A stretch of DNA of 64,000 nt from Macrostomum lignano (lineage: Eukaryota), in NCBI GenBank assembly GCA_002269645.1, contig NIVC01001233.1, forward strand, positions 76,021-140,020. Direction: 5' to 3'. This document shows, one piece after another, positions 34,901-64,000 of the stretch (within the stretch, counting starts at the first letter, position 1; every line of letters begins with the position of its first letter). Under the pieces are notes generated by a model. The model saw only the letters and a list, made by a program, of their open reading frames with translations. It was not told the DNA's origin and ran no database searches. The position numbers and the translations under genes are program-made.

Positions 34901-37900
34901 TAGACTCAATTCAGTTTATTGAGTAGACTCAATTCAGTTTACTGAGTAGACTCAATTCAGTTTATTGATTAGACTCAATTCAGTTTATTGAGTAGACTCA
35001 ATTCAGTTTACTGAGTAGACTCAATTCAGTTTATTGATTAGACTCAATTCAGTTTATTGAGTAGACTCAATTCAGTTTATTGAGTAGACTCAATTCAGTT
35101 TATTGAGTAGACTCAATTCAGTTTATTGAGTAGACTCAATTCAGTTTACTGAGTAGACTCAATTCAGTTTATTGAGTAGACTCAATTCAGTTTACTGGGT
35201 AGACTCAATTCAGTTTACTGAGTAGACTCAATTCAGTTTATTGATTAGACTCAATTCAGTTTATTGAGTAGACTCAATTCAGTTTACTGAGTAGACTCAA
35301 TTCAGTTTATTGATTAGACTCAATTCAGTTTATTGAGTAGACTCAATTCAGTTTACTGAGTAGACTCAATTCAGTTTATTGATTAGACTCAATTCAGTTT
35401 ATTGAGTAGACTCAATTCAGTTTATTGAGTAGACTCAATTCAGTTTATTGAGTAGACTCAATTCAGTTTACTGAGTAGACTCAATTCAGTTTATTGAGTA
35501 GACTCAATTCAGTTTACTGATTAGACTCAATTCAGTTTATTGAGTAGACTCAATTCAGTTTACTGAGTAGACTCAATTCAGTTTATTGAGTAGACTCAAT
35601 TCAGTTTTTCCAAAAAAAATTCTATCGAAGCTTATCCAGCTGGCTTTGAAAGTTTTACAGGGAAATTTAACAGCTTTTTTGGTTGTGATTTTTGTTGCTT
35701 TTTATTAGTTGTTGGGTTGATTAGATGATAGTCTAATCGCATTAACCAGCTGTTATCATTACTGCTAGTATCCAATCTCACGATTTGATTATTATCAATT
35801 TAAGGCTGAGTGCACTGAAATGCATATCTGACTCATCGTCTAGCCTATGAGTGAATCTGCTGCACTGATCGTATGGGACTCAAGCTCTAGCACTTATTCC
35901 TAATCAGTTTTAGTCATTGAATCTGCCTCTCTGCTCCCATTGAATCTGCCTCTCTGCTCCCATTGAATCTGCTTCTCTGCTCCCATTGAATCTGCCTCTC
36001 TTCTCCCATTGAATCTGCCTCTCTTCTCCCATTGAATCTGCCTCTCTTCTCCCATTGAATCTGCCTCTCTTCTCCCATTGAATCTGCCTCTCTGCTCCCA
36101 TTGAATCTGCCTCTCTGCTCCCATTGAATCTGCCTCTCTGCTCCCATTGAATCTGCCTCTCTGCTCCCATTGAATCTGCCTCTCTGCTCCCATTGAATCT
36201 GCCTCTCTGCTCCCATTGAATCTGCCTCTCTGCTCCCATTGAATCTGCCTCTCTGCTCCCATTGAATCTGCCTCTCTGCTCCCATTGAATCTGCCTCTCT
36301 GCTCCCATTGAATCTGCTTCTCTGCTCCCATTGAATCTGCCTCTCTGCTCCCATTGAATCTGCCTCTCTGCTCCCATTGAATCCGCCTCTCTGCTCCCAT
36401 TGAATCTGCCTCTCTGCTCCCATTGAATCTGCTTCTCTGCTCCCATTGAATCTGCCTCTCTGCTCCCATTGAATCTGCCTCTCTGCTCCCATTGAATCTG
36501 CTTCTCTGCTCCCATTGAATCTGCCTCTCTGCTCCCATTGAATCTGCCTCTCTGCTCCCATTGAATCTGCCTCTATTCTCCCATTGAATCTGCCTCTCTG
36601 CTCCCATTGAATCTGCCTCTCTGCTCCCATTGAATCTGCCTCTCTGCTCCCATTGAATCTGCCTCTCTGCTCCCATTGAATCTGCCTCTCTTCTCCCATT
36701 GAATCTGCTTCTCTGCTCCCATTGAATCTGCTTCTCTGCTCCCATTGAATCTGCCTCTATTCTCCCATTGAATCTGCCTCTCTGCTCCCATTGAATCTGC
36801 CTCTCTGCTCCCATTGAATCTGCCTCTCTGCTCCCATTGAATCTGCCTCTCTGCTCCCATTGAATCCGCCTCTCTGCTCCCATTGAATCTGCCTCTCTGC
36901 TCCCATTGAATCTGCCTCTATTCTCCCATTGAATCTGCCTCTCTGCTCCCATTGAATCCGCCTCTCTGCTCCCATTGAATCTGCCTCTCTGCTCCCATTG
37001 AATCTGCCTCTCTGCTCCCATTGAATCCGCCTCTCTGCTCCCATTGAATCTGCCTCTCTTCCTCTCTGGAGTGTGCCGTTGGTAAATGGATTTCATTCAC
37101 TAGACAGCCAGGCCACTACCCCTATTCGGTAGTACTTTACCAGCTAATAGCGAGCTCATTCAGAGCCATCTGCTTTAGCAGCAGCAGCAGAAAATAGCCA
37201 TTGAAATCTTGCAGCGGCCCAACTCCAATGCCACTTTGGACCGTCGAGCCAGCGTCCCTCTGCAGAAACAGCAGCCCCAGCAGCAGCCATCGTCCTCTTT
37301 GCAAAAGCAGATTTCAGCGGAACAGCATCAGCCGTCGTCAGCTGCTGATGGCATCGTTCGCGAGTCGGACAGCAATGACATCCTGCCGCAGCAGGGCATC
37401 GCCAAGGCTCTGCTGAGCGTCTGGCGAGATAAGGAGCTGCAGAAGCAGCAGACTCAACAGCAGGAGCAGCAATTGCTTCAGAGGAAGCGACAATCTCTTG
37501 CATCATTCGAGCGCTCGCCGTCTTCGTCCTCGCTGTCCTCGGCAGCGGGGGCTCGGCGACAGTCTTCGTACAGCCAGGCGAGCGGGCCGCCGTCTCCCAG
37601 GAGGGCGGAGGTACCGGTGGCAATGTAGAATATCTCAGAGACAAAATCACCCACCCGCAGTTCACTGGGCCACGCTAATCTAATAATTACCCAAATGGAT
37701 TGCTAGTCGGAGCCTTCATCATTTCCTGTTTGAAAACAGCACAAATCCTTGGCTAATTGTTTTACAGTTTGATTTAAATCACGCCTACTAGATTAGCAAT
37801 CCATTCGAGGACAGCTAATGATTGCCAGCCAGTAGAAGCGAATGATTCACAAACACTCAAGTGAACTAGATGCTGCTCAATAATGATTGCAATGCGGTAT

Positions 37901-39011
37901 TGCAAAGCTTGCACCTGCTTAAGCCTCAGTAAAACAAGATTATAATTTATTTTCAGCACTGATTTTAGTCACCGATATCAGTTACCATGAGCTCAAGTTT
38001 TTGTTATTAAATTTCTTTGAAGTTTGAAGAAGCTCAATGATTGCAGAGTTGCTCTGAAAAAGTATGCTTTAGTTTGTCACGAATTTGCACTTTTGTACGT
38101 TTGCACTTTTGTATCCTAGGGCTCGGGCACTACGCGTAAATGTACGAGGTAATAATCAGTAAAAAACTATAAAATTATAAAGTTTTAGTGTCTAATAACA
38201 ACAGAGTGATCAGACTCGAAGTAATGAAAGGGAAAGAGCGCATATTTTCAATAAGCAGTCAAACTCTTTAAGTTGCAACTACAATTCGTGTGCACTGTAA
38301 ATGTACATGCGCACTGTTAAAAGTACATGCACATGTTAAAAGTACACGTGCGCTATTAAAGTACTGCGCACTATTTAAGTACGTGCGCACTATTAGAGTA
38401 CGTGAGCACTATTAGAGTACGCGCGCACTATTGAAGTAAATGCGCACTATTAAAGTACTGAGCGCCCGCTCGCCGTCCCACTCCAGGCCGTCGCCCCGAC
38501 CCAGCGCCGACCCTACCAGCCGCAGCCCAACATGGACTTTGACTACACCGCCCCGGTGCGCAGTGCCGCCGAATCTGAGTCCAGCCCGGTTGAGCGGCCG
38601 CCGGACGTTGTCCGGTCAGGCGATCCAAATCCGGCCGATGAGCTGCCGCCGGCCAACTTCACCCGCTCGGCGCTGCAGATGTGGAAGAACAAGGAGGTGG
38701 AAGGCGGCAAGGTTGCGCCAAATCCCGAGACCTCCGAGCGGCTCCGACAGCGCGCCCGCGAGACCTCCGGGGTCAACAACAACATCCGATTGCCGGGGGC
38801 CGCCTCCGTTGGTGTCTCCGGCTCCCGTGATTCCGACGACGCTGAGAGGCCGTCGTCGCCGCAGCCGCAGCCGCGCGACGAATCGTCGGAGAACGAACCG
38901 TCGGTGCCGCCAGCAGACGTGGCTCGCTGGGGCGCCGGCGACGGCAACGACGAAATGCCGAAACAGGGCATCACGCAGAATCTGCGCTCGATGTTCAGCG
39001 GCGGCCAGTAG
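12209..39011 (+). CDS. LIM-domain actin-associated protein (EPLIN/LIMA1-XIRP-LIMD2-class LIM), multi-exon gene model
   Basis: Phase-consistent exons: 12209-12268, 12423-12488, 14359-14488, 21505-21812, (28134-28253 possible), 28776-28900, 29401-29474, 29554-29598, 29676-29764, (31190-31375 alternative), 31744-31977, 37215-37610, 38487-39011 (TAG). All GT-AG. In-frame upstream ATG at 12188. Linkage of the N-terminal exons to the LIM exons rests on phase and strand only. Confidence 0.75.
13699..13887. mobile_element. MITE related to the 4988-5152 element
   Basis: Right end reverse complement GGGGTCGCCATCATAAACCTGAAA resembles the 4988 end; internal CCCGAAATATCAC subrepeats in inverted orientation; left end shortened, no TSD seen. 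Confidence 0.7.
14520..15070. repeat. Purine-rich degenerate minisatellite (GGAGAGGAGTAGACAGC family)
   Basis: Repeating AGTAGACAGCGGAGA core, including ~60-bp compound units. Confidence 0.9.
15733..15800. mobile_element. Fragment of a dispersed repeat (GGGCCGGATA motif), second copy at 63603-63660
   Basis: GGGCCGGAT(T/A)GCTATT...CAAAG...GCCGGATAGAGAGGCTT...CGGGCC shared; both copies follow GA-rich tracts. Confidence 0.55.
16418..16991. repeat. (CTAT)n/GATA microsatellite, ~570 bp
   Basis: Direct reading. Confidence 0.98.
17645..21300. repeat. 33/32-bp satellite CCTGTAGCTATTATGATCGGTCATTGGAATTCC
   Basis: 33-bp period, with 32-bp CATTGTCATTCC variants occurring in blocks. Confidence 0.97.
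21921..22160. repeat. 77-bp tandem repeat, ~3 copies
   Basis: CATTGGCTGGTG at 21921, 21998, 22075 and 22146. Confidence 0.92.
22741..22830. repeat. Dispersed repeat fragment, second copy at ~24181-24275
   Basis: Shared GGC(A/C)AACCCCC...CAAAG...GTG(T/C)ACATGC...GACCGCTGTACAC...TGTGTGAG. Confidence 0.55.
23524..23979. mobile_element. ~455-bp non-autonomous DNA transposon, TIR CACAGATAC...TAGATGGGCCACTCAG
   Basis: Inverted ends; near-complete reverse-orientation copy at 44523-44973. Confidence 0.88.
24973..25036 (+). mobile_element. tRNA-derived SINE head or tRNA pseudogene (Ser-GCT-like loop)
   Basis: A-box TAGCCAAGATGG, loop GGACTGCTAAT, B-box GGGTTCGAATC; no convincing acceptor stem or Ser long variable arm. 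Confidence 0.5.
25080..26900. repeat. 23-bp satellite GAGCCACCATGTCAAACATAAAA
   Basis: 23-bp period (e.g. 25622, 25645, 25668). Confidence 0.96.
26985..27790. repeat. 17-18-bp G-rich minisatellite ATGCTTGCTATCTGGGGG
   Basis: Direct reading; variable G-run length. Confidence 0.95.
28776..29474 (+). CDS. LIM domain exons (28776-28900 + 29401-29474)
   Basis: Spliced: [61 protein letters not shown]; full Cys/His LIM pattern with the VYPME and LYCxPH signatures of the EPLIN/LIMD2/MICAL class. Confidence 0.95.
28905..29310. repeat. 21-bp minisatellite GAGTTACAGGTCTGACAGAAT inside the intron that splits the LIM domain
   Basis: 21-bp period beginning just after the 28901 donor. Confidence 0.96.
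30370..30845. repeat. 80-bp tandem repeat x6 carrying AGCCAATGA
   Basis: CTAGGGGGCAGG at 30461, 30541, 30621, 30701, 30781, plus a first variant unit near 30380. Confidence 0.95.
31190..31375 (+). CDS. Candidate alternative first or cassette exon of the LIM gene
   Basis: ATG at 31190, GC-rich open frame, GAC|GTAAAA phase-0 donor compatible with exon 31744. Confidence 0.5.
32050..35607. repeat. 23-bp satellite GAGTAGACTCAATTCAGTTTA(C/T)T
   Basis: Highly homogeneous 23-bp period over ~3.5 kb. Confidence 0.98.
35912..37065. repeat. 23-bp satellite CCCATTGAATCTGCCTCTCTGCT
   Basis: 23-bp period. Confidence 0.97.
38290..38460. repeat. Degenerate ~20-bp repeat GCGCACTATTAAAGTAC just upstream of the last LIM-gene exon
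   Basis: About 8 degenerate units. Confidence 0.8.
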
Positions 39012-39594
39012 TAGACTCGCGTACTTTTAGCATGTACTTTTCGACGTTTCTTAAGATATAGACTACTAAAGTGCATATGTACTCTAGGAAGTTGTGCGCA
39101 CTCTAACAGTGTACGCTATCAAAGCAACCCCGCCCCATTCCCAATTAAAAACTCCGTTAAGCACCAATAAAAATGGAATGGACTTTTTTATTTTGCTTTT
39201 TTGTAACTTTTTTCTTAACAATATTTTTATAAGCGAGCTCGTCAGGCCTCCCAACGCTGAACACAACGATTTTGATCTTGCTTTGCTGCATAACTCGATA
39301 ATTTGCTACTCTGTTCACACTGAGCCTATGAGCTGCTATTGCTTCTGTACTCTTGTAATTTGATTTAATTCGAATGTGCTTAGCAAGCTCGCTTATCTTG
39401 GTTAGCTGGATCCCACCGATTCATTCCCACATTTTAACCGCGGTTTTTTATAAAATATAATACACAAATATTTTTCCTTCTTTTCAAAATTTCCTCTTTT
39501 GTTGCGTTCCATCGGCTTTTTGTATGCTAGCCTTTATTAGCTACTGAGCACAATAGTAGTATGTATTGTATTTTATTGCGTCGAATTTGCACTC

Positions 39595-41510: not shown

Positions 41511-42174
41511 AAACATTCAAGCTGTGGTTTCGCTTTTAGTGGATGTTTTGAATGTCTAAATTTATATTCAACAGTTGGTAATGGGTACCGCACAGTTACT
41601 GCACTTAAACTCTTGTTAAATGCTTGCAGTCGGTTTGAAAAACCTTTATCATTTAACTACAGCTGGGGGGATGTCTGCATAGAACGCATGCAGCTGCTTG
41701 TTCCTCAAATGCGCAGAATTACACCATAAGGCAGATTGGAGCAGAATGTGAAGGTTAAAAATATCTCCCCTGCCCCCAGTTTTTCCCCCAAATCCCCTCT
41801 CCATATATGGAAATGAGCTGTGGGATGGATAGAAGCCTTCAGGACGAGTCCTGTTTCTCTCCCGCTTCCCGGTTCTCCTTTTTCCTTCCCTCCCTGCAGA
41901 GATTCTGAGTACACTGGCTGAGTACTCCAGTGTACTCACAGGATGCCTCAGCGGTCGATAATTCCAGCCTCAGTCTGGCTTAGTCTCGCCTCTTCTCTGC
42001 AGTTTTGAGCGTCTCCATGGCAACTGCGCAGAGAGGCTGTGGTGGACGGGAGAGGAGAGGAACGTTGAGGATGGATTATCGATCCGAGTCTCAGTGCACT
42101 GGCCAAGCCAGATAAATCCCCAACCAGTTGGCATCCGCAGCCCTCTCCTTCCTCACTGCGAGAAACACTCAACC

Positions 42175-43646
42175 ATGCAGTCTCCGCGCTTCATCAATAA
42201 CAGCCGCTCCCAGCTGGTGCTGGCCCTGCTGCTCCTGGCGACCGCCCTGCCGGCCCCGGCCGCTGCCTCCGGCGGCTACGCCGACTACCTGGCCAGCATC
42301 GAGAAGCGGAACCAGCGCCTTCATGACGACTACCTGGGCAGCCTGGCCGATGGACAGCGCAGCTTCCTGGACGATCTGAACGGCCATGTGGCCGACCTGC
42401 AGGCCCGGCACTACGTCAGCGACTCCGCCTACCCGGCCGGCTTCGACGCCGACCGCTACTGGTCGGAGCTGCTCGAGCGGACCGCCCAGGCTGCCGATGC
42501 CCAGCGGGCTGCTCGCAGCGGCCTCGGTGAACTCGACGACGACCGCCTGGTTGACGATTCCGACATCGTTGTCGGCGGCGGCGGCCCGGCCCGGCGCGAG
42601 GAGGAGCCGTTCCTCAACCGGATCTGGGGCGCGCAGAAGGTCAGCGGCGGCGCCGGCGAGCCTGGCCAGGTGACGGGCCCGGAGGACCGGCCGCAGCCGG
42701 CCAAGGTGATGAGCGACACCCTGCCGAGCTACTGTAACCCGCCCAACCCCTGCCCGGTGGGCGCCGATCCCGCCAAGCTGACCGCCCCCTGCGACAGCCA
42801 CGTCAGCGACACCGCCGAGTACAACCGGAACGACGCCCTGACGAAGATGGCCGCCGGGCAGTGCCCCTGCGACAACGAGCACATGGAGTGCCCGGCTGGC
42901 AGCGTTGGCGTCAATTCCAAGAAAGCCTCGCAGGTAAACATCTGACTCCCAGATTTCAGATTAGAATATTTATCTTTCATACCAGCTGAAGATAAATTCC
43001 TATTCTCAATATGCTACAGATGGGCGGTCACCTCAATCCGTTCCTGCTTGGCAACAAGCGGGACAAGCTGGACGCCAAGAAGTCGCCACGGTACTCCATA
43101 AGCAAGCGCGGCGTGCGGGCCAAATTTCAGAGCCGAGTGGTGCGTTGAGATGGGAGGGAAGGGGAGAGGGCTTTGATGATCTAAATCTTAACTTTAGACG
43201 GTAAAAAATTATCAACTATGCAGTCTGGTGCTGGCGAGATGGTTTGGCCATAGACTGTAATGAAAGGCCATAGACAATAAAATTGGCCTTCACTCCTAAT
43301 GTTGTATCTAAGGTATTTTTCTCAGAATTTTCTCCATTTAATAGTCTGTGGGTATTTTATAGTCCTTGGTAATTTTATAGTCTATGGCCATTTTATTGTC
43401 TATGGCTATTTTAAAGTCTATAACCAAACCGTTCCAACATCAACGCTGCGTTTTTTCTTTGCATTAGAAAATTTCGGAGTTTCAGTTTGATCGTCAACAA
43501 GCGGGAGAGCTGTCTAAATAATGTCTGCTCACAACCCCCCGCAGATGGAGAAGAAGAACCCCTGGCTTGATGGCGTGGACGCCCTTGACACCGTCGAGAA
43601 GAAAGCCGGGCGCCACGTCTACCTGGAGGAGCCGCTGGTGGAGTGA
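42175..43646 (+). CDS. 7B2: Neuroendocrine protein 7B2 (prohormone convertase 2 chaperone/inhibitor); exons 42175-42933, 43020-43112, 43545-43646
   Basis: Signal-peptide-like LVLALLLLATALPAPAAA; 7B2 hallmark LPSYCNPPNPCPVG...CPCDNEHMECP; two CT-peptide motifs LNPFLLGNKRDKLDAKK and KNPWLDGVDALDTVEKK; phase-0 introns (second donor GGC|GTGCGG is weaker). Confidence 0.93.
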
Positions 43647-45644: not shown

Positions 45645-46210
45645 CAATTCCTCCTGTAAGCCTTGACATTTTAGCAATTCCCCCCTGTAAGCCTTGACAT
45701 CTTAGCAATTCCCCCCGTAAGCCTTGTCATCTTAGCAATTCCCCCCGTAAGCCTTGACATCTTAGCAATTCCCCCTGTAAGCCTTGACATCTTAGCAATT
45801 CCCCCTGTAAGCCTTGACATCTTAGCAATTCCCCCCATAAGCCTTGACATCTTAGCAATTCCCCCTGTAAGCCTTGACATCTTAGCAATTCCCCCCATAA
45901 GCCTTGACATCTTAGCAATTCCCCCCATAAGCCTTGACATCTTAGCAATTCCATCCGTAAGCCTTGACATCTTAGCAATTCCCCCCGTAAGCCTTGACAT
46001 CTTAGCAATTCCCCCTGTAAGCCTTGACATCTTAGCAATTCCCCCCGTAAGCCTTGACATCTTAGCAATTCCCCCCGTAAGCCTTGACATCTTAGCAATT
46101 CCCCCTGTAAGCCTTGACATCTTAGCAATTCCCCCTGTAAGCCTTGACATCTTAGCAATTCCCCCTGTAAGCCTTGACATCTTAGCAATTCCCCCCGTAA
46201 GCCTTGGCAC
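45645..46210. repeat. 30-bp minisatellite CTTAGCAATTCCCCCTGTAAGCCTTGACAT
   Basis: 30-bp period, about 18 copies. Confidence 0.97.
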
Positions 46211-47910: not shown

Positions 47911-49174
47911 GTCTCAGGCACTGTATATTCTGCAAACACAGATTTGGGATCAAATCATACGACCGAAGCTTCAGAAGGTTTTCCCAGCTATCTACTCGTT
48001 CGCTACTTGTGAGCTGCGGGCAGCCACTATCACAACGGTTTCGGCAAAAGACACGAGAAAGCAATTACGAATAAATAGGAAGGCTTAAAGCATGCTCATA
48101 GAGTGTATATCATACCTTGCAAAGCTGCTGAAGTCATGTCAGAGCATCAATTTTTATCAAAGTCTCATTATGTTATTATTTATTTAGGCCCTCTGCCTGT
48201 CACAGCTAGCTGTCAAAGCATCTGCAAACATAATGATTTTGCGTGTTTGTTGAGCACTTTTACTTCTACATGAGGCAAAGCTATTTAATTTTGAATTTCG
48301 CTTTGACATCAATGGTAATCCATCTTACTTTTATCTGGTAAGGGGGGGGGTTATCGAGCAATTATCTTGACCGAAACGGCGACTTTGAAGATCCAATTAA
48401 CTCGGGGCTGCGGGGGCGGGGGCTTGTGTCGGTGGGCTGTTCTGCGATTCAAACAACCCATGACGAGGTCCAGCCACTAAGACATGCATGTAGACTGTAG
48501 AGAATGTAAATGCCCGACGATTCGAAATTCAGGGCCAGCGGAGTCAGCGGAATGTCAAGAGTTGCCCCAGCGCGCTTGCTGCAGGACGATGTGGTCGAAA
48601 GCTTGCGCCAGGGTGCCCTCGTAACCCTGCTGCGAATGCTTATTAATTATGGTGCGGGTTCAGCACTCAAGGAAGCACCCGGCCTTGGGCTGCTGGACAG
48701 ACTGAGCAACACCGCTGGCGGGCCCTCATGGCCCTTAGAGTCTTCTCTCATCCCATGCTTAACGAGTTCGCTGTGCCGATATAGCATTTCTGGACAAAAA
48801 TAGCTTGATAAACTTGTGAGTCCACTGGGCAAAACACCTACGAGCTACTCGCTTTGTTTGCGAGCGCAGCGTCTTTGATACTTATTCGGAAACAAACTAT
48901 GAGTATTGACTACACTGTGAATAGCAGCTTGTTTCCTAAATAGTATCAGTCCATTTTCTGTTTCAATCATAGCAAACAAACTGTGTGTCTCCTAGCACAA
49001 ACAGCTAACTGGAAAATAGTCGACAGCTCGAGTCTGAAAGCCAATGGGAAGATAGCGGCCTAGTCAGCCAGTCGATAAATAAGACAGGACAGCATCGCTC
49101 TGGCTACGCAGCACTCAGCTCCGCCTCGCTCTCCTCGAAACCTTGAACCTTAACCGAACCTCAACCGAACTGAG

Positions 49175-49498
49175 ATGCAACCAGTTACAGTGGTTCTACC
49201 GATTCTGCTTCTGCTGGCGACGGTGCAGCAGTCTTCAGCCGCCGCGATCACTGCTGGCGATGTGGACTCAACGGACGAAACGGTCGCTGACCTCGCCCGA
49301 CACTGCGACATTCGGCGCCGACTGAAACTGCCCACTCCGGCGGCGCTGTGCGTTGAGCTGCTGCGGGACAGGGCCGCGGACGCGCCGCCAGACAAGCGGG
49401 CGTGGCTGCAGTCGTCGCAGCTGTCCTACCAGAGATTCATGGACAAAATGCGCGAGGGTGACGAGAAGCAGCGGTACAATGTCATGCGATACGGCTGA
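49175..49498 (+). CDS. Single-exon neuropeptide precursor, 107 aa, C-terminal ...YNVMRY-amide
   Basis: Hydrophobic signal peptide (VVLPILLLLATVQQSSA), Cys pair in the propeptide, KR site, terminal Gly before the stop; AATAAA at 49559 and 49570. Confidence 0.88.
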   Translation: MQPVTVVLPILLLLATVQQSSAAAITAGDVDSTDETVADLARHCDIRRRLKLPTPAALCVELLRDRAADAPPDKRAWLQSSQLSYQRFMDKMREGDEKQRYNVMRYG

Positions 49499-50359
49499 GA
49501 TGCAAATAGATTCCCTTCTATCTGACGAGTTCGCTCCTCTGTTGTTGTCATCAAGTTGAATAAATTATTAATAAATTTCAGCTTGTGGAGCATGAATCTA
49601 TTTTAAATGATTCTTAGCGGCTACTTCTATCTGTATTGGTTTTTATCTATCTATAACAGACTGCATTTTGGCGAAAATTCTCTTATAATATTTAATATAT
49701 TTCCCATGGGCCTTCACTAAAAGAGAGTCAACCCAAGGACCGCTAGGAACACTTCGAGTAGTAATCCTTGGATCGATCCTGGCCTCCTCGTTTAATAGGT
49801 ATCATTCGATCATTGCTTGATTAATAAGCTTTGTTAGAATCCCACTGGCAGCCAATGTAGATATAGGAAAAGAATAGAGCAGGCATACAATTAGTACAGA
49901 AGCAATTGACAAAAATATTGATCCCATTTAGATAGCAATTTATACTTTAAGCGTTTTGCTCATTCTAATCTCTCCAAGAGCTCATCAGTCATAGGCTCAT
50001 ATTTCGCATTGTTCACTCTTGGAGACAATATGATCCGAGTTTCTTAATGCATTTGCTTTGACAAATTGGAGAAAATGCATTGGGACTGTCATATAGTTTC
50101 CGAAGATACCCAGCAGTCCGGCCCTCGAGAAAGGAGTCAGCAGAGTTCGATTTCTGATCCGCGTTATGCACAGAAGCGATCGGACTGATCGAATTATTAA
50201 AATATGACTTCATGGCGTGAACTAATTAACCAATTACTCTGATGCAATAAAGTGTCTGTCGGACTTGACAGGGAGCTGATCGGTACTACACTGCTCAGGT
50301 TTTGTAACACATCGCAGTGGGCGACCTAAACACTCCATTAAAATCGGTGGTGGTTACTA

Positions 50360-52999: not shown

Positions 53000-53878
53000 A
53001 TGTGCCAGTTTAAAGTAGTCAACCAGCAGCAGCAGGCGGCTGGCGGCTGCCAGTGCCGCTGCGGCCAGCAACTGGAAGCCCCGCCTGCTTCTACAACAAC
53101 TGACGAGTTGCGTCAGCTACCCGTAGAGATTCTCGCCAGGTACGTCAGCGTCAGGCGGCCCATAGAAGCATGCCATCGGACAGTCTCGGACACTACGTCG
53201 GCCTATTCGCCAGCCTTGGCGGACCAGCTGACAGCCAGCGGCGAGCCGGGCTGCGCCAACGGAAGGCGACACCGAGTCCGTTTCGCCGACGACATGGGCC
53301 GGTCGCTGATCGAGATTCGACTGTACCAGCCGGACCCGCCCACCTGCTTCGATAACGAATTGGAAGACAAACAGCAGGACAGCGACTGGCAGACAGAGCT
53401 GGACGATAGCTACCAAGATGCACCAAGGCTCGTGTGCGACTTCGTGCTGCTGAGCCGGGAGCAGGTGCTGGCGTCACTAACAACTGATGGCATTCGACTC
53501 GAGAAGCTGGGCCTGAACCTGCGCACCAGCTGTATCGTCGGCAGGGCCGTGGTGACCAACTTGGTCTACCAGAAGCGAGTCTTTGTCCGCGTCACCCTGG
53601 ACGCCTGGCGCACCCATGTCGACGTGGACGCCACCTTTGCCGGATCAATCGACAACCGGTTGGACGCGTTCGCCTTCCGGTTGCCGCTGTCCGCGGCTGA
53701 GGGTCTGGATCTGGCCAACGAGCCTGCCGAGTTCGAATTCTGTCTCGGCTTCGAGTCCGGCCTGGAGCCGGCCGACAGGCGCTGCCTGTGGGACAGCAAC
53801 GGCGGTAGGAACTATCGGGCCTCGCTGCTGCCGCCGCCGCGACGGGCTACGTTTTGCATTGACAGCGACGAAGACTGA
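53000..53878 (+). CDS. PPP1R3: Protein phosphatase 1 glycogen-targeting regulatory subunit (PPP1R3 family, CBM21), single exon
   Basis: RVxF motif RVRFAD; CBM21 signatures GRAVVTNLVYQKRVFVR.T...W and WDSNGGRNY. Confidence 0.93.
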   Translation: MCQFKVVNQQQQAAGGCQCRCGQQLEAPPASTTTDELRQLPVEILARYVSVRRPIEACHRTVSDTTSAYSPALADQLTASGEPGCANGRRHRVRFADDMGRSLIEIRLYQPDPPTCFDNELEDKQQDSDWQTELDDSYQDAPRLVCDFVLLSREQVLASLTTDGIRLEKLGLNLRTSCIVGRAVVTNLVYQKRVFVRVTLDAWRTHVDVDATFAGSIDNRLDAFAFRLPLSAAEGLDLANEPAEFEFCLGFESGLEPADRRCLWDSNGGRNYRASLLPPPRRATFCIDSDED

Positions 53879-57699: not shown

Positions 57700-60600
57700 A
57701 TGCAGAATTCGCCTCAGCGGCAAGGGCAACAGCGGAGCCCGCAGAAACTGCAGCTGAAGCAGATGCAGCCACCGGCGGCGAGGCATCAGCTGGCTGACCT
57801 GGGCGCCTCCGGCAAGCTGGTGACATTCTACCGGAATGGCGATCCGCACTTTCGCGGCCTCGGCGTCTCCATTAACGATCGGACTTTTGTTTCCATGGCA
57901 ACGCTGACCGCTTGGCTGAACGAAAAAATAAGCACGCCGTCGGGAGTGAGACACGTCTTTAGACTGCCAGATGGGAAACAGGTTCGAGTCTTTGTGTGGA
58001 GTATGTGCAATTATGCTGACTAGCATAGTTAGATTGTAAAGTAGATTCAGCTAAAACAATAAAACTGATCCTTAGAGTATCGGAGCGGCGGGTAAGGCGT
58101 CCGAGTCTTACGATTCAGTCCTAGGGTTCGATTCGACGCACGATCGTGGAATAATCTGGGGTTTGTGGACGGAATGTTTTGTACGATTCGAATCCACGAG
58201 AGCGCACTAGAGTGTGTATACTGCTGGTGAATTCCCTGGGCACTCAGGGGCCGGCACAGCCTCCTGTGATTTTATGACAAGCTATTCCTGTCCACCTGTC
58301 TATCCGAATTCTAATTTGCAAGGTGACGCAACTTGCCGATTTTGAGGCCGGCGGTCACTACGTGGTTTCCAGCAGCCCCAAGCTGGTCCGCTCCGTGGAG
58401 TACGGCGGTCCCCGGCCGGCTTGGCGAATGAAGCCGCCGAGCGCCAAAGCCGGCAAGCGCACCCGCGACGATCTTCGTCTGCTGTTCGGTCGGGAAAGCG
58501 CCGGGATCGCCGGCGAAAGCGACGAGCAGCGCCGACACCTGCAGCGGCACGGAGCTGCCGGCCCGAGGAGCGGCGGCGATGCGACTGGCCAGGGAGCTCC
58601 GAGCAAGCCGCGCAGCGTGGTCTTCATCAGCAACACGCACCGGCAGAGCCGGGAGCGTCTGCTGATCAACCCAGGCAAGGCTGCCGCAGCTGACGGGCTG
58701 GATACTATGTTGGAGGACCTCGGCAGCCTGCTGGTGATGGCCAACCCGCCTGCTACTTGCCTTTACACAGCCTACCCGCCATACAGAAAGGTTTGTTGGA
58801 AAATTTCTAATGCTATTTCTTATGAAACTGTAGATACGAAAGTATAAAACGTCCTTCTGCAGGTATTAAAGCTGTCGCAACTGTTCAGCGAGTACAAAGA
58901 CTACGACAGTTTCATCGCCTGCGGCCAAGAATTCCTGCCAGCAGAGTTGCGCAGCCGACCGCTGGAGGCGGCTGCTGTCTGGGGTGACGAACCCGTACGT
59001 GGCGGCGGCGTTGGAGACGGCAGTGAAGGAGGGGCGCAAAGACTAGGAAGGCTGGAGCCGGTGGCGCCAACGTCCGGGCAGGTCAACGGTTCGACGCAGA
59101 TGCAACAGGCTCAGGCGCAGCAGCAGACGCACCAGCCACCGCAATCACCATCGCCACCGCCGCCTCCTCCGCCGCCGCCTCAGTGGCCTCGCAATGGCGA
59201 GGAGAATCGACTTGATGAGCAGCAGCGACTGCGGCTGCTTCAACTCCAGCAGGAGCAGCTTCAGGTTCAGCAGCAGCAGCAACTGGGAGACAGGAGCCCG
59301 GCAGTTGGTATGGAGTTTCTCTAATAGAACAGAAAGCACTGTGCTAGTTTTCACTGGGCCAGCTATTTTTTATGTTTTGCCCCTCATCTCACAGCCGGCA
59401 GATACGAAGCAGCAGAAGACAGCGACGCTGTTAACAGTGAAGATGAAGAGACTGGTAGCTTCCAGCAGCTCCCGCAGCTGTCGGGTCGCGAGTCGATGCA
59501 GAAACCTCCAGCGGCTACCGTCAGAATCCGCGGAACCTTACACAGTGAGCTGCTGCTTGTTTTTTTTACTTCAACCATCATCAACAAGCACTTGCTCCAG
59601 CTGCCCATTCCACCCTCAACCGCCCCCTACTTCCAGCTTTCCCAGCTCCCACAGCAACCGTGCCGAGTCGTCAACAGCTGCAGCCACCGGACGTGTCTCT
59701 CCAATTGGATTGGGTCTACGGCTGCAATAGCTCGGCGGGTCTGCTGGCGCTGCCTACCGGGGACCTGCTGTACGCCTCCGGAAATGTTCTGATCCTACTG
59801 GACTCAAAACGGCACCGGCAGAGGCACTACACTGAGCACACTGCACGGGTCACGTGGTAAGTTGTGGGGCAGTGAAGCCATTCAGCCACTGAGACGAAGA
59901 TGCGAGGGTGGTCAGGGGCTCAGGGGTCAGCGACTGACGTCTTGATAGCTTCGGGTCTACTGTTGCCTTGGTTTTTAGCAGAGCCTAGAAAGCCCCTCGC
60001 CTGGTGAATTATCTGAGGACGAAGAACCCAGGATGGTCGTGAGATTGGAACTGAGGAAAAGCAAGGCATTTGCGTTGTATTATTGTCGGTTGTACTGTAC
60101 GGGTATGACTTGCCTTGGCTTGGCTTTTTCTCCTAGGCCACACCCAGACTGAGTCGCTCTGCTTACCCAAAAATTCGCAGCGCCGCAGCCCACCCTGTGA
60201 ATGCCTACATCGCCTCTGGCCAGGCGGCATCCCGATCCGGAGCTCCAGTCCAAATCCGCATCTGGGACGCCGAGAGTCTGGAGACTCGGGTTGTCTTGTC
60301 CGAGCCGCATCTGCAGACTGGCATCGCGTCGATTTCATTTTCGGGTGAGAGCCTCGGAGCTTACCTGCTCGCTGTGGACTCGCCGAAGCCGCCCGGACAT
60401 CGACAGACGTTGACTGTCTTTGACTGGGCAGCCCGTCGGGAGGTGCTGAAGTCGCAGACTGCGCGAGATCAAATCAGTCGAGCGGTGTTCCACCCGGAGG
60501 ACGATTCAATAATCGTGACTGTGGGTGCCGAGCGACCGAGCTTCTGGCGCATCTTCCACGACAGTGCGGGCCGGAGCCGGGCACTCCGCGACAAAAAGAG

Positions 60601-63600
60601 CGGCGTGTTTGCACCTGGATCAGCGGCACCAAGCCAGAAAGATGAGGTGACGGCCGTGGCCTTCGATCTTGTCGGCAACGTAATAACCGGGGACTCGGCT
60701 GGCCGCCTGCAACTGTGGTGTCGCGACCAAGATGACGCATTCGTGCTCAGACCAGTGGAACGACTGAATCACGCGCATTCGGTGTGTAATATCTAAATAT
60801 ACTAAATATTATACTAAAAATTAAAATTAAAATACTAACTCTAGCTTTAGTATAACCTGATGTGTCTATTCGATAAATCTTCGTCTAATTTATATGCTAA
60901 CTTCACACAGGAGGCAATCCAATGCATGTACATTCTGGGCGATGGCGCTCTGATTTCGGTGTCGGCAAAGCGAATTCACGTCTGGGACACATTGAATGGC
61001 TACAGTCATGTCAAGGAGGCATCGGTAATTCGTCAGATTTTGCTCTTGGTTGTGCCCTGGTGTCCTGAACTTACATAGGTCCTGAAATAACTCTCTGATT
61101 TCAGACCAGCGGCCAGGTCTCGGAGGACATTGCCGCATTGGCACTGAAGCATCCGCGTAGTCTAGACGGACGGCTGGTGGTGGCCACAACTGGCAATTGC
61201 ATCCTAGAGGGCTCTCTGCACGATCAGTTTTTCTGCCTTGTACAGGTGCAGCACAGTTTTACATTAAAAAAATAAGGGGCCATATCTCTACCTTTTGAAT
61301 TACGAGCTAATACTCGCACAACAGGGTCATAAATCGTCCTCAAACGCTAACGGTTTGATTGTGAGCGCCCATCCGAGTGAGCCGGATCTGGCAACCTGCG
61401 GCGGCGCTGACGACGACAGGTCAGTCTGCCGTTGGTCGGCCAGTCAATGTCGATTGGTCTGGCGGGTTGCCGTCGAAGACGCCTGCTCCAGCGCGGCCTA
61501 CCATCCTCGAGGCCACCTGCTACTGCTGGGCACGGCCACGGGTCGGATCGTGGCACTGCAGCATGCGCGCGGGGAGTACGCCATATCCTGTCAGGTCACC
61601 GAACGAGGCCAGGCCGTTGTGTGCGTCCGTTTTAGCAGCAGTGAGTGACATGCTTTGGAATTCCTTTGTAATGGAAAGATGTTGCTGACAGTAATTTGAA
61701 TACGAGCGTACAAAGCTGTCAAAATCAGCAATGCGACTGTTATGATTGATGCCATGAAGGTTCTTTCCTTCTTCGACGCTTCTGTTTAGTTCATTAAGTT
61801 TTGTTTTCAAACCTGAGATGAGACGCGTCTATAAAGTACCCGCCTAACCCAACTCCGTGCTGCCAAGACGGCCGTCTGCTGGCCCTGGGCACCAGCGACG
61901 GGCGAATCTACATGATGTCTGTCGAAGACAACGGACTCGTTTATCGAAAATACCGTCAAGGAACTCTGACCGGCCACTCAAGTCCGTTGGTCCGGCTGGA
62001 CTTTTCAGTGGATTCAGCCACCCTTCGAAGTCAGTCTGAGGACTTGGAAGTCAGATTCTGTAAGTCTGTGATGAAAATTGGATTATTGTCGAGTTTACAA
62101 GTAAAAAAGCCGCGAGTCTTTCTAGCTGTTCGCTGGTGCTTTAACTCTGCACGCAGGGTCGGTGCCAAACATGTCTGAGGTCCCTGGCGCGGAATCCGTC
62201 AGTAACGTGAGATTCTCCACCGAGACATGCTCACTGAGTTACTATCACGCTGCAGCTTGGCAGCTTCATCAAGCCAGTTCAGACACTGGCATCACAGCCT
62301 CGTGCCTGTCCGGTCACGGAGACCTGCTCTGTGCTGGCGACAGCGCAGGACAAGTGAGCATCTTCCGCTATCCAACGCATCCACTACAGGTGAGCCAGCA
62401 AAGCTGAGTGGTAGACTAAGGAATATCATCTGGCTGGGTTATTTTGGAATGGCCTTACTTTCTTATCACACAAATTATGGTTTACTTTGAGGTAACCTTA
62501 AAAGGTCATTTAGATGCAATCAAAGGGTATTGCGATCAACTACTCGTAGTATAGAGTACAAATGAAGCATAAAAATTTGTGACTCGTTTCGAAAAGTAAC
62601 CCACCCTCAAGACATCAAGTTTCATTATACCTTAGTAGCTTCGTTAAGGGTGATTTGTAGCATCAACTAATAGTACGCCGCTAAAGTTTTATAAGTTAAC
62701 ATTGTATATGTCAGTTCTACATGAAACCGCGAATGGCGTGAAATGGCGTGAAACCGCGAATGGCTCATTAAATCAGCTACATGTATGGTTCCTTAGATTG
62801 TCTCATCCTACTCGGATAACTGTGGAACATCTAGAGCTATTACGTGCTTACAAGCCCTGACCTCACGGGAGGGGCGCATTTATTAGATCAAAACAAATCG
62901 GGGCTTGCCGCGTCTGCGTGGTGACTCTGGATAACTTTTGTGCTGATCGTATGGCCTCTGCGCGGGCGAAGTATCTTTCAAGTGTCTGCCCTATCAACTT
63001 ACGATGGTAGGTGATATGCCTACCATGGTTATAACGGGTAACGGAGAATCAGGGTTCCATTCCGGAGAGGGAGCCTGAAAAACGGCGTGCACTTTAGCAG
63101 CGTACTATTAGTTGATGCTACAGATTAAGCTGAGTGATTATCAGTGACTCGAGATTAAGGCTTGTCTTTTTCATATGGTTTTTACATATAAAACTCACAC
63201 TGGAGACGAGAAGAGAGATGAGAAATCAGAGGAGAGAAGAGTAGAGAGAGGAGAGAAGAGGGGAGAAGGGAAATGAGAGGAGAGAAGGGAGAGAAGAAGA
63301 GAGAGGAAAATGGAGAGGAGAGGAGAGAAGAGAAAGGAAAGGAGAGGAAAGGATAGGATAGGATAGGAGAGGAGAGGAGAGGAGAGGAGAGAGAGGAGAG
63401 GAGAGGAGAGGAGAGGAGAGGAGAGGAGAGGAGGGAGAGGAGAGGAGAGGAGAGGAGAGGAGAGGAGGAGAGGAGAGGAGAGGAGAGGAGAGGAGAGGAG
63501 AGAAAGGAGAGGAGAGGAGAGGAGAGGAGAGGAGAGGAGAAGAGAGAAGAGGAGAGGAGAAGAGAGAAGAGGAGATGAGAGAGAGAGGAGACACAAACCT

Positions 63601-63903: not shown

Positions 63904-64000
63904 GCATCAACGATGTACTCATAAATATTACCTTTATTTACCTTTTGTATTGATACAAATAAAATTCCTTAATATTAAAAATACAACTAACAGTTTTTTC

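What the first reader, a model, noticed from the sequence alone, without database searches (positions are those of the whole stretch)
49175..49498. Unassigned RYamide neuropeptide precursor with myosuppressin-like architecture and a sulfakinin-like tail
Seen: signal peptide, propeptide with C-x14-C (CDIRRRLKLPTPAALC), KR, then AWLQSSQLSYQRFMDKMREGDEKQRYNVMRY-G-stop. This predicts a 31-mer amide, or YNVMRY-amide if the monobasic Arg is cut. Established: arthropod myosuppressin precursors have a propeptide Cys pair and a single C-terminal FLRFamide; sulfakinins end YGHMRFamide, the same Y-x-x-M-R-aromatic spacing. Inference: this may be a flatworm member of one of these families or a new one. 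It does not fit NPF/NPY (no RxRFamide, and the peptide does not follow the signal peptide).
Basis: partly seen in the sequence, partly recalled or inferred. Interest (0 to 1): 0.8.

Follow-up and report, generated by a model that had tools for sequence, protein, structure and literature searches.

The report
Orphan RYamide prohormone gene, Macrostomum
This is a small, real, intronless gene of the flatworm Macrostomum lignano that most likely encodes the precursor of one amidated "RYamide" signalling peptide; it has no detectable relatives, is not a myosuppressin or sulfakinin, and resembles the spiralian NKY peptides only loosely.

Summary
Window 49175..49498(+) is a 107-aa ORF with a signal peptide, a propeptide with C-x14-C, a KR site, a 31-residue peptide ending MRY, then Gly-stop. 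The window is Macrostomum lignano (assembly Mlig_3_7), and the identical protein lies on three contigs of this neopolyploid.

The gene looks real:
- The codon signal is strong in this frame only.
- It sits on a sharp GC island, with a TATA-like box upstream and two AATAAA signals downstream.
- The copies differ by one synonymous change where 7-11 changes are expected.

No homologue turned up in 5.8 billion proteins (word search) or 1.84 billion representatives (exhaustive phmmer).

The family guesses fail. Myosuppressin profiles score no better than shuffles, and its spiralian orthologues are myomodulins. Spiralian sulfakinins end GGGRFamide, and the candidate's Tyr lies in a basic context.

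The closest known kind is spiralian NKY: same precursor layout, long peptide, [I/L/V]MRY-Gly at the precursor's end. However, the near-invariant NKY cores are absent and profile support is marginal (p about 0.007).

Verdict: a plausible new orphan RYamide prohormone, of ordinary interest. Expression and the peptide itself are untested.

The parts
49075..49081 (+). TATA-like element (ATAAATA), about 100 nt upstream of the ATG
   Evidence: Sequence reading. A role as core promoter is inferred. The region 48714-49111 is 97-100% identical between the three copies.
49175..49498 (+). Complete intronless CDS, 107 codons plus TGA: the candidate preprohormone
   Evidence: ORF. GC by codon position 0.69/0.45/0.73, like the neighbouring real genes. 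Codon log-likelihood +24.8 bits in frame, against -23 and -30 out of frame; 0 of 2000 shuffles reach it. One synonymous difference between copies where 7-11 are expected.
49175..49240 (+). Signal peptide (residues 1-22; cleavage after Ala22, Ala23 or Ala24)
   Evidence: Hydrophobic core 4-17 with mean KD 2.79; SSA|AA fits the -3/-1 rule. No SignalP run was available, so the exact site is inferred.
49241..49393 (+). Propeptide (residues 23-73): acidic start, then Cys44 (49304-49306) and Cys59 (49349-49351) with C-x14-C spacing, and an RRR (49313-49321) inside the loop
   Evidence: AlphaFold2 on the single sequence predicts helix 30-50, loop LPTP, helix 55-69, with pLDDT about 70-80. The disulfide is inferred.
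49394..49399 (+). Dibasic Lys74-Arg75 prohormone-convertase site
   Evidence: Cleavage is inferred from the general KR rule. M. lignano has a neural, essential PC2 (PMC4490696), and 7B2 is encoded in this window.
49400..49492 (+). Predicted mature peptide AWLQSSQLSYQRFMDKMREGDEKQRYNVMRY (31 aa; as the amide, monoisotopic M 3941.89)
   Evidence: Predicted helical with a kink at Gly95-Asp96. Net charge about +2, pI 9.4.
49472..49492 (+). Optional monobasic site Arg100, followed by YNVMRY (hexapeptide amide, [M+H]+ 844.41)
   Evidence: Arg100 has a basic residue at P8, and P1' is not aliphatic, so Devi-type monobasic rules permit cleavage but do not favour it. Masses.
49493..49498 (+). Gly107 (amide donor) directly followed by the TGA stop
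   Evidence: About a quarter of NKY-2 precursors end in the same way...RYG-stop.
49559..49575 (+). Two AATAAA polyadenylation signals (49559-49564 and 49570-49575), 61-72 nt after the stop
   Evidence: GC falls from 0.57-0.71 in the CDS to 0.26-0.35 here. The stretch 49118-49654 has only one difference between copies.

Best explanation
Window 49175..49498(+) is a genuine, compact, single-exon gene of Macrostomum lignano. It encodes a 107-aa secreted preprohormone.

Proposed processing and action:
1. The signal peptide is removed after Ala22-24.
2. The propeptide may fold as a helix-loop-helix pinned by a Cys44-Cys59 disulfide.
3. PC2 (helped by 7B2) or PC1/3 cuts after Lys74-Arg75.
4. The C-terminal Gly107 is converted by peptidylglycine alpha-amidating monooxygenase into an amide.
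5. The product is one 31-residue, mostly helical, basic peptide, AWLQSSQLSYQRFMDKMREGDEKQRYNVMRY-NH2. A minor second product, YNVMRY-NH2, is possible if Arg100 is also cut.
6. The peptide is released from neurosecretory cells and acts on a rhodopsin-type GPCR of the RFamide/RYamide-binding group. Its hydrophobic-Met-Arg-Tyr-amide end is the end shared by spiralian NKY and sNPF peptides, so the sNPF/NKY-type receptors that flatworms possess are the first candidates.

In family terms it is an orphan. It is either a Macrostomum-lineage peptide or an NKY-type precursor diverged beyond recognition.

Shown: the ORF and all its motifs, the coding signal, constraint between the copies, and the lack of detectable homologues.

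Inferred: secretion, every processing step, amidation, neural expression and the receptor class.
For: Gene reality:
- Codon-position GC of 0.69/0.45/0.73 matches 7B2, CBM_21 and EML in the same window. The codon log-likelihood is +24.8 bits in frame against -23/-30 out of frame and at most -0.6 on the reverse strand; 0 of 2000 shuffles reach it. The GC island coincides exactly with the ORF.
- TATA-like box, in-frame upstream stop, purine at -3, and two AATAAA signals 61-72 nt after the stop.
- Three genomic copies encode the identical protein. The CDS has 0-1 differences, the one being synonymous, where the flank rate predicts 7-11 (P=0.0002-0.005). The whole stretch 49118-49654 carries a single difference.

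Prohormone anatomy:
- Signal peptide, KR site and R-Y-G-stop. It is the only one of 146 ORFs with this combination, and none appeared in 40 shuffled windows.
- Predicted helical peptide.

Machinery:
- 7B2 is encoded 6 kb upstream (PF05281, E=8e-20).
- M. lignano PC2 is neural and essential (PMC4490696).

Receptor class:
- NKY-1 ends IMRYamide, sNPF peptides include GSLMRYamide, and both act on the Platynereis NKY/sNPF receptor. Smed-NPYR7-10 are sNPF-type.
- Fasciola has NKY-receptor-like GPCRs.
Against: - There is no transcript, peptide or expression evidence. The collections hold no M. lignano transcript assemblies: a control gene, CBM_21, is also recorded only on the genome contig. Expression therefore could not be tested either way.
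- No homologue exists in any other species, so there is no cross-species conservation to mark a bioactive core.
- Low divergence between copies could partly reflect gene conversion rather than purifying selection.
- With 18% basic residues, a dibasic site is expected by chance, and a C-terminal Gly occurs in about 7% of proteins. The case for amidation rests on the R-Y-G context.
- The signal-peptide call is rule-based, not from SignalP.
- The receptor assignment is an analogy from four C-terminal residues.
Confidence: 0.6

Rival explanations
1. It is the flatworm's strongly diverged orthologue or paralogue of the spiralian NKY family (closest to NKY-2). It keeps the precursor layout and the two ends of the peptide but has lost the conserved core.
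For: - Same layout: signal peptide, propeptide, dibasic site, then one long peptide at the very end of the precursor, ending [I/L]MRY-G with or without basic residues.
- Candidate end VMRY-G-stop; about a quarter of NKY-2 precursors stop right after RYG.
- A Trp lies near the peptide's start (AW... against xxxW...). Trp to C-terminus is 30 residues in both the candidate and Notospermus NKY-2.
- The NKY-2 profile is the only one of five tested that beats shuffles: p=0.006-0.008, even when KR and RYG are kept in the controls. hhalign gives P=0.0026.
- NKY1 is reported in a polyclad flatworm, and NKY-receptor-like GPCRs exist in Fasciola.
Against: - The NKY-2 core W-x-W-x-P-x-x-G-Y-x-x-x-P is invariant in 35-56 sequences across annelids, molluscs and nemerteans. 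Only its first Trp is present here.
- The NKY-1 core FWxxMGPLPVETRLxSFGS is also absent, and the NKY-1 profile gives p=0.15-0.18.
- The HMM score is only 5.8 bits, hhalign probability is 11.5%, and only 14-16 C-terminal residues align.
- After correction for five families the p value is about 0.03-0.04, and the comparison was chosen after seeing the sequences.
- NKY propeptides have no Cys pair.
Confidence: 0.2
2. It is a secreted peptide of a non-neural gland (prostate or seminal fluid, adhesive or rhabdite gland, or an antimicrobial peptide). The KR and terminal Gly are incidental and it is not an amidated neuropeptide.
For: - An orphan, lineage-restricted, small secreted protein.
- A basic, moderately amphipathic helix (muH 0.3-0.4, pI 9.4).
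- Dibasic sites are expected by chance at this composition.
Against: - An exact R-Y-G-stop end directly after a hydrophobic-Met pair is the signature of RF/RYamide peptides. It was found 0.025 times per shuffled window.
- The layout is that of single-peptide prohormones such as NKY, myosuppressin and PDF.
Confidence: 0.13
3. It is a flatworm member of the myosuppressin family or the sulfakinin/CCK family.
For: - Myosuppressin precursors do have a signal peptide, a propeptide with a Cys pair (C-x15-C in Diptera, C-x12-C in Schistocerca), KR, and a single C-terminal RFamide. They are also about 100 aa long.
- The arthropod sulfakinin end Y-G-H-M-R-F has the same spacing as Y-N-V-M-R-Y (from knowledge of arthropod sulfakinins).
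Against: - Myosuppressin HMM p=0.33-0.49. hhalign probability is 1.6% and covers the signal peptide only. The invariant D-V-x-H-V-F-L-R-F is absent.
- The spiralian orthologues of myosuppressin are myomodulins.
- Spiralian sulfakinins end GGGRFamide and come as two copies.
- Tyr101 is flanked by Arg and Lys, not Asp or Glu.
- No Pfam hit even at E<=10.
Confidence: 0.03
4. It is a chance ORF in a GC-rich non-coding stretch and is not expressed as protein.
For: - No homologue and no transcript evidence are available.
- About a third of the window is repeats, which produce many spurious long ORFs.
Against: - Frame-specific codon signal.
- No tandem repeat overlaps the ORF.
- Fewer substitutions than the flanks, and the only one is synonymous.
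- Promoter-like and polyA signals in the right places.
- The combination of features is absent from shuffles.
Confidence: 0.05

Closest known systems
Spiralian neuropeptide KY (NKY-1 / NKY-2; Conzelmann 2013, Bauknecht & Jekely 2015, Thiel 2021)
   Same: - Signal peptide, propeptide, dibasic site, then one long (31-43 aa) peptide at the extreme C-terminus of a precursor of about 105-140 aa.
- The end is hydrophobic-Met/Leu-Arg-Tyr-Gly, often followed directly by the stop.
- Trp near the peptide's N-terminus and an acidic or Gly-rich middle.
- Marginal profile similarity over the last 14-16 residues.
   Different: - Lacks the near-invariant cores: NKY-2 WIWMPAQGYVSVP and NKY-1 FWxxMGPLPVETRLxSFGS.
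- Has a propeptide Cys pair that NKY lacks.
- The peptide is predicted helical and rich in Lys, Arg and Glu, rather than rich in Gly and Pro.
- Statistical support is too weak for homology.
Arthropod myosuppressin precursor (e.g. dromyosuppressin)
   Same: Overall architecture and size: about 100 aa, a propeptide Cys pair with similar spacing (C-x12-15-C against C-x14-C), KR, and a single C-terminal amidated peptide ending hydrophobic-Arg-aromatic.
   Different: - The peptide is 31 aa rather than 10 aa.
- No DVxHVFLRF motif.
- It ends G-stop rather than GKRR.
- No profile similarity at all.
- The spiralian counterpart of myosuppressin is myomodulin.
- The resemblance is best read as convergence of a common prohormone design.
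Spiralian sNPF-type peptides (GSLFRFamide, GSLMRYamide, KSMFRYamide; planarian npp-4 GSVFRYamide)
   Same: The C-terminal x-hydrophobic-[M/F/L]-R-Y-amide. If Arg100 is cut, YNVMRYamide would have the sNPF size.
   Different: - sNPF precursors carry three to seven short copies flanked by GKR or GR.
- Here there is one copy at the end of a long helical peptide, and the cut would be at a monobasic site that the rules only permit.
NPY/NPF family (including flatworm NPF and the planarian npy genes)
   Same: A long (31-39 aa) helical amidated peptide ending Arg-aromatic-amide.
   Different: - The peptide does not follow the signal peptide.
- No RPRF/Y end and no Tyr at -10/-17.
- No phase-2 intron in the penultimate Arg codon.
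- NPF profile p=0.8.
Sulfakinin / CCK
   Same: Y-x-x-M-R-aromatic-amide spacing, as in arthropod YGHMRFamide.
   Different: - Spiralian sulfakinins end GGGRFamide and come in two copies.
- Tyr101 lacks the acidic context needed for sulfation.
- No Pfam Gastrin/CCK hit.

Membership tests
NKY (NKY-1/NKY-2) | Precursor layout: signal peptide, propeptide, dibasic site, and a single long peptide at the extreme C-terminus ending RY-Gly (with or without basic residues) | tested here: met
   Candidate: KR, then a 31-mer, then RYG-stop. The same layout is seen in 11 NKY-1 and 56 NKY-2 precursors.
NKY (NKY-1/NKY-2) | C-terminal hydrophobic-[M/L/F]-R-Y-amide | tested here: met
   VMRY-G against IMRY-G, LMRY-G, LLRY-G, AMRY-G and PFRY-G.
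NKY (NKY-1/NKY-2) | NKY-2 core W-x-W-x-P-x-x-G-[YF]-x-x-x-P (invariant columns) | tested here: not met
   The invariant columns are W, W, P, G, Y, P. The candidate has WLQSSQLSYQRFM: only the first Trp, plus a Tyr at the same W-to-Y spacing.
NKY (NKY-1/NKY-2) | NKY-1 core FWxxMG(G)PLPVETRLxSFGS | tested here: not met
   Absent from the candidate. NKY-1 HMM p=0.15-0.18 against shuffles.
NKY (NKY-1/NKY-2) | Statistically supported profile similarity | tested here: inconclusive
   NKY-2 HMM (54 sequences) scores 5.8 bits, p=0.006-0.008 against 3000 shuffles. hhalign probability 11.5%, P=0.0026, 14 columns.
NKY (NKY-1/NKY-2) | Activates the NKY/sNPF-type GPCR | not testable with these tools
   Needs a receptor assay.
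Myosuppressin | Single C-terminal decapeptide x-D-V-x-H-V-F-L-R-F-amide | tested here: not met
   Invariant in 12 precursors. The candidate ends KQRYNVMRY.
Myosuppressin | Propeptide Cys pair (C-x12-15-C) | tested here: met
   Candidate C-x14-C. Diptera C-x15-C, Schistocerca C-x12-C. This is a resemblance of form only.
Myosuppressin | Profile similarity of the precursor | tested here: not met
   HMM p=0.33-0.49. hhalign probability 1.6%, signal peptide only.
Myosuppressin | Phylogenetic expectation: in Spiralia the family is represented by multi-copy myomodulins ending RL/RMamide | tested here: not met
   Thiel et al. 2021. The candidate is single-copy and ends RYamide.
Sulfakinin/CCK | C-terminal motif: arthropod D-Y-G-H-M-R-F-amide; spiralian D-Y-G-x-G-G-G-R-F-amide | tested here: not met
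   Spiralian precursors: DYGIGGGRFGKR and YFYGGGRFGR. The candidate, RYNVMRYG, shares only the Y-x-x-M-R-aromatic spacing of the arthropod form.
Sulfakinin/CCK | Sulfatable Tyr in an acidic context | tested here: not met
   Tyr101 has Arg at -1, Gln at -2 and Lys at -3. The rule that acidic neighbours are required and basic ones inhibit comes from established knowledge of tyrosylprotein sulfotransferase specificity.
Sulfakinin/CCK | Match to Pfam Gastrin/CCK, or any Pfam family | tested here: not met
   No Pfam family at E<=10.
NPY/NPF | Peptide directly follows the signal peptide; C-terminal R-x-R-F/Y-amide | tested here: not met
   A 51-residue propeptide precedes the peptide, and the end is VMRY. 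NPF HMM p=0.80.
NPY/NPF | Conserved intron within the codon of the penultimate Arg | tested here: not met
   CGA TAC GGC TGA is contiguous. The feature is described for human NPY and Moniezia NPF in bioRxiv 10.1101/712687.
sNPF-type | Several short (5-8 aa) copies ending [LF]-R-[FY]-amide, flanked by G[KR][KR] | tested here: not met
   There is a single possible hexapeptide, and only after a permitted but unfavoured monobasic cut.
Luqin/RYamide | Peptide right after the signal peptide, and a Cys pair in the C-terminal part of the precursor | tested here: not met
   Here the Cys pair precedes the peptide and nothing follows Gly107. The family definition is from established knowledge (Yanez-Guerra & Elphick 2020); I did not read that paper here.
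Described flatworm prohormones (Smed npp/spp/npy; parasite npp-1..44) | Detectable sequence similarity or a shared C-terminal motif | tested here: not met
   - No hit in the word search or exhaustive phmmer, whose libraries include nr and UniRef entries.
- Planarian RYamides are AILLTRYa, GSVFRYa and ...ARPRYa.
- No MRYG or RYG[KR] in the held T. crassiceps npp supplement.
- McVeigh 2009 and Koziol 2016 themselves could not be read.

The most novel reading that the evidence does not exclude
The gene founds a previously undescribed, macrostomid-lineage RYamide neuropeptide family. It arose independently of NKY, NPF and myosuppressin, and converged both on the myosuppressin-like precursor design (Cys-pair propeptide plus one C-terminal amide) and on the NKY/sNPF-like MRYamide pharmacophore. 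That would give a new ligand for one of the many orphan RFamide/RYamide-type GPCRs of flatworms, in a species that can be made transgenic.
Probability: 0.35. Interest if true: 0.5.

Novelty: new member of a known kind. Interest (0 to 1): 0.35.

Why it matters
Flatworm neuropeptide catalogues are built mostly from planarians and parasites. Macrostomum lignano belongs to an early-branching flatworm lineage (Macrostomorpha). It has transgenesis, RNAi and single-cell data, but I found no published prohormone catalogue for it.

A validated new RYamide peptide would add a ligand candidate for the expanded and largely orphan NPY/sNPF/NKY-like receptor set of flatworms. If intermediates link it to NKY, it would show how far a peptide that is nearly invariant across annelids, molluscs and nemerteans can drift in flatworms.

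NKY's physiological receptor is still debated, so a divergent NKY-like ligand in a tractable animal could help settle that.

Beyond this it is one more predicted orphan prohormone, a routine outcome of neuropeptide mining.

Tried and rejected
1. Homologue searches with the precursor. The word-indexed search of 5.8 billion proteins at E<=10 and exhaustive phmmer on 1.84 billion representatives returned only the protein itself. The single extra hit, P0002, is a repeat protein on a prokaryote-like metagenome contig and is spurious.
2. Pfam at E<=10: nothing.
3. Myosuppressin membership: rejected.
4. Sulfakinin membership: rejected.
5. NPF and PDF/cerebrin profiles: no signal.
6. A by-eye resemblance between the NKY-1 propeptide 'VDDLHKFLIRRRR' and the candidate's 'VADLARHCDIRRR' did not survive the profile test (NKY-1 p=0.15-0.18).
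7. Expression evidence from public assemblies: uninformative, because a control gene is also absent from transcript-type contigs.
8. Literature search for the peptide's sequence strings: no paper.
9. McVeigh 2009 is not held. The polyclad NKY1 sequence is not in the held supplement. The npp supplement of PMC11196405 is small and has no matching ends.
10. The bacterial-type promoter/terminator scan is irrelevant for a eukaryote and found nothing.
11. The second R[FY]G-ending ORF in the window is the antisense ORF of the same locus and has no coding signal.
12. I did not run a structure search with the AlphaFold model. At mean pLDDT 66.7 for an all-helical small protein, the matches would be meaningless.
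Full report
WHAT IS THERE. Window 49175..49498 on the + strand is an uninterrupted ORF of 107 codons:

MQPVTVVLPILLLLATVQQSSA | AAITAGDVDSTDETVADLARHCDIRRRLKLPTPAALCVELLRDRAADAPPD | KR | AWLQSSQLSYQRFMDKMREGDEKQRYNVMRY | G | stop

- A hydrophobic signal-peptide core (residues 4-17, mean Kyte-Doolittle 2.79) is followed by SSA|AA.
- Two cysteines are separated by exactly 14 residues.
- A Lys-Arg pair precedes a 31-residue peptide, which ends Arg-Tyr.
- A glycine follows, then the stop.

An in-frame TAA lies eight codons upstream of the ATG. The ATG has a purine at -3. An ATAAATA element lies about 100 nt upstream, and two AATAAA signals lie 61-72 nt after the stop.

ORGANISM AND CONTEXT. The identical protein is encoded on three contigs of GCA_002269645.1 (NIVC01000352, NIVC01001233, NIVC01003187). 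This is the Mlig_3_7 assembly of the neopolyploid free-living flatworm Macrostomum lignano. The window is the NIVC01001233 copy. On the same strand:
- A single-exon 7B2/secretogranin V gene lies 6 kb upstream (42169..42945; PF05281, E=8e-20).
- A CBM_21 protein lies 3.5 kb downstream (53000..53878).
- An EML beta-propeller exon lies at 60197..60796.

About a third of the window is minisatellite DNA, which explains the many long spurious ORFs. None of these repeats overlaps the candidate.

IS IT A REAL GENE?
- Coding signal. GC at the three codon positions is 0.69/0.45/0.73. That is the same pattern as the three neighbouring genes (0.64-0.70 / 0.47-0.50 / 0.65-0.89), while the flanks fall to 0.26-0.48. 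A codon model trained on those neighbours gives +24.8 bits in frame, -23 and -30 in the other two forward frames, and at most -0.6 on the reverse strand. None of 2000 nucleotide shuffles reaches the observed value.
- Constraint. The three copies differ by 2-3% in their flanks. The CDS has no difference between two copies and one synonymous change (nt 60) against the third, where 7-11 are expected (binomial P=0.0002-0.005). The whole stretch 49118-49654, which matches the inferred transcript, carries only that one change. Gene conversion could contribute to this.
- Chance. Of 146 ATG-ORFs of at least 50 aa in the window, only this one combines a signal-peptide-like start, a dibasic site and an R[FY]-G-stop end. 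No ORF did so in 40 locally shuffled windows.

I could not test expression. A control gene that is certainly real (CBM_21) is likewise recorded only on the genome contig, so the collections contain no M. lignano transcript assemblies.

RELATIVES. The word-indexed search of 5.8 billion proteins, even at E<=10, and an exhaustive phmmer scan of 1.84 billion cluster representatives returned only the protein itself. One other hit, P0002, is a repeat protein on a prokaryote-like metagenome contig and is spurious. Pfam gives nothing at E<=10. No paper in the library contains the peptide's sequence strings.

Myosuppressin. I retrieved authentic precursors.
They are about 100 aa, with a propeptide Cys pair (C-x15-C in flies, C-x12-C in Schistocerca), KR, and one C-terminal [14 protein letters not shown].
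- The similarity is architectural only. A myosuppressin HMM scores the candidate no better than shuffles (p=0.33-0.49). hhalign gives 1.6% probability and aligns only the signal peptides.
- Thiel et al. 2021 state that the spiralian orthologues of myosuppressin are the myomodulins, which are multi-copy precursors ending RL/RMamide.

Sulfakinin.
- Spiralian sulfakinin precursors carry two copies ending DYGIGGGRF-G and YFYGGGRF-G, so the HMRFamide comparison holds only for arthropods.
- The candidate's Tyr101 is preceded by Lys-Gln-Arg. By what is known of tyrosylprotein sulfotransferase specificity, that context is unfavourable for sulfation.

NPY/NPF.
- There is a propeptide before the peptide, and no RxRF/Y end.
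- The NPF profile gives p=0.8.
- The conserved intron in the penultimate Arg codon is absent.

THE CLOSEST KNOWN KIND: NKY. NKY peptides are long (up to 43 residues) and end IMRYamide or LLRYamide.

Their precursors have a signal peptide, a propeptide, a dibasic site and one long peptide at the very end, finishing ...[I/L/F][M/L/F]RY-G with or without basic residues. A profile search with NKY-2 found 56 members. About a quarter of them stop directly after RYG, like the candidate. Other points of resemblance:
- The candidate has a Trp at position 2 of the peptide, where NKY has it at positions 4-6.
- Trp to C-terminus is 30 residues, the same as in one nemertean NKY-2.

Of the five family profiles I tested, only NKY-2 exceeded the controls:

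| Profile | Fraction of 3000 shuffles scoring >= candidate |
|---|---|
| Myosuppressin | 0.33-0.49 |
| NPF | 0.80-0.83 |
| PDF/cerebrin | 0.42-0.53 |
| NKY-1 | 0.15-0.18 |
| NKY-2 (54 sequences, 5.8 bits) | 0.006-0.008 |

The NKY-2 result holds even when the shuffles keep the signal peptide, KR and RYG. hhalign gives P=0.0026. Against this:
- Only the last 14-16 residues align, and hhalign probability is 11.5%.
- After correction for five families the p value is about 0.03-0.04.
- The NKY-2 core W-x-W-x-P-x-x-G-Y-x-x-x-P is invariant across annelids, molluscs and nemerteans. Only its first Trp is present here.
- The NKY-1 core FWxxMGPLPVETRLxSFGS is also missing.

So two defining features are met (layout, C-terminal motif), two are not (both cores), and the statistics are inconclusive. 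I therefore do not file it as an NKY. I name NKY as the nearest known design and give about 0.2 to true but unrecognisable homology.

Known planarian RYamide-ending peptides are different in kind: npp-3 AILLTRYamide, npp-4 GSVFRYamide and NPY-5 ...ARPRYamide.

HOW IT MOST LIKELY WORKS. The following is inferred except where stated.
1. The signal peptide is removed after Ala22-24.
2. AlphaFold2 on the single sequence (mean pLDDT 66.7; 70-80 over residues 41-107) predicts helix 30-50, a loop at LPTP and helix 55-69. This places Cys44 and Cys59 on facing helices. The mature peptide is predicted as a helix with a kink at Gly95-Asp96.
3. A prohormone convertase cuts after Lys74-Arg75. M. lignano has a neural PC2 whose knock-down is lethal (PMC4490696), and its helper 7B2 is encoded next door.
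4. Because Gly107 is the last residue, no carboxypeptidase step is needed on the peptide. Amidation gives AWLQSSQLSYQRFMDKMREGDEKQRYNVMRY-NH2 (monoisotopic 3941.89, net charge about +2).
5. Arg100 satisfies the monobasic rules only permissively (basic residue at P8, Tyr at P1'). YNVMRY-NH2 ([M+H]+ 844.41) is therefore a possible minor product, and it would look like a spiralian sNPF peptide (GSLMRYamide, KSMFRYamide).
6. The RRR inside the Cys loop has Leu at P1', which disfavours cleavage.

The hydrophobic-Met-Arg-Tyr-amide end is the feature shared by NKY and sNPF peptides, and both activate the Platynereis NKY/sNPF receptor. Flatworms possess sNPF-type receptors (Smed-NPYR7-10) and NKY-receptor-like GPCRs (Fasciola). 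That receptor group is the first candidate target. This rests on four residues and deserves no more than about 0.3 confidence.

NOVELTY AND VERDICT. The proposed family links do not hold, and the score of 0.8 is too generous. What remains is a well-supported gene model for an orphan, single-peptide RYamide prohormone in M. lignano. It is a new member of a familiar kind, the RF/RYamide neuropeptide precursors. Dozens of lineage-restricted examples are already known in flatworms.

It would gain interest in three cases:
- Orthologues in other flatworms bridge it to NKY.
- It turns out to be the ligand of an orphan flatworm GPCR.
- It is shown to be a recently born neuropeptide gene.

Transcript mapping, in situ hybridisation, peptidomics and receptor assays would decide these. 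None of them can be done with the tools at hand.

Noticed in passing
window 42169..42945 (+): Apparently single-exon gene for neuroendocrine protein 7B2 (secretogranin V), the PC2 chaperone. It carries the PPNPCPVG motif (PF05281, E=8e-20) and lies 6.2 kb upstream of the RYamide gene on the same strand. The exact 258-aa product is not on record as a called gene.
   Followed up: partly
window 53000..53878 (+): 292-aa ORF with a CBM_21 starch/glycogen-binding domain (PF03370, E=2e-18), like a protein phosphatase 1 glycogen-targeting subunit. It was used as the control gene for the expression look-up.
   Followed up: partly
window 60197..60796 (+), probably with further exons at about 58300-64000: Exon encoding the first beta-propeller of an EML (echinoderm microtubule-associated protein-like) protein (PF23409, E=8e-41). 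GC-rich ORFs at 58323..58847 and 59194..59730 may be upstream exons or UTR.
   Followed up: no
window 1-4532, 17653-21281, 25080-26910, 32054-35607, 35915-37059, 40245-41508, 45636-46206, 50362-51685 and others: About a third of the window is minisatellite arrays with 15-35-nt units and up to 206 copies. They generate most of the long ORFs. The 15-mer array at 50362-51685, just 3' of the RYamide gene, is where the three genomic copies differ most by indels.
   Followed up: partly
window 38440..39076 (both strands) and 37156..37665 (-): A GC-rich stretch (GC about 0.5-0.54) with overlapping ORFs of 159-196 aa and no Pfam match. It may be an unannotated gene or exon.
   Followed up: no
window 49150..49311 (-): Antisense ORF of 53 aa overlapping the start of the RYamide CDS. 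It also ends ...RLRFG-stop but has no coding signal (codon score at most -0.6 bits on the reverse strand). It is a mirror-image artefact that could mislead motif-based peptide mining.
   Followed up: yes
proteins P0003-P0056: The NKY-2 mature peptide is remarkably invariant (NNG[IV]WIWMPAQGYVSVP...GKIMRYG) across more than 50 proteins, with named hits from Urechis, Tubulanus and Mytilus. Most come from unnamed metagenome or Logan contigs. I saw no obviously flatworm-like divergent member, but the taxa of most hits are unknown.
   Followed up: partly
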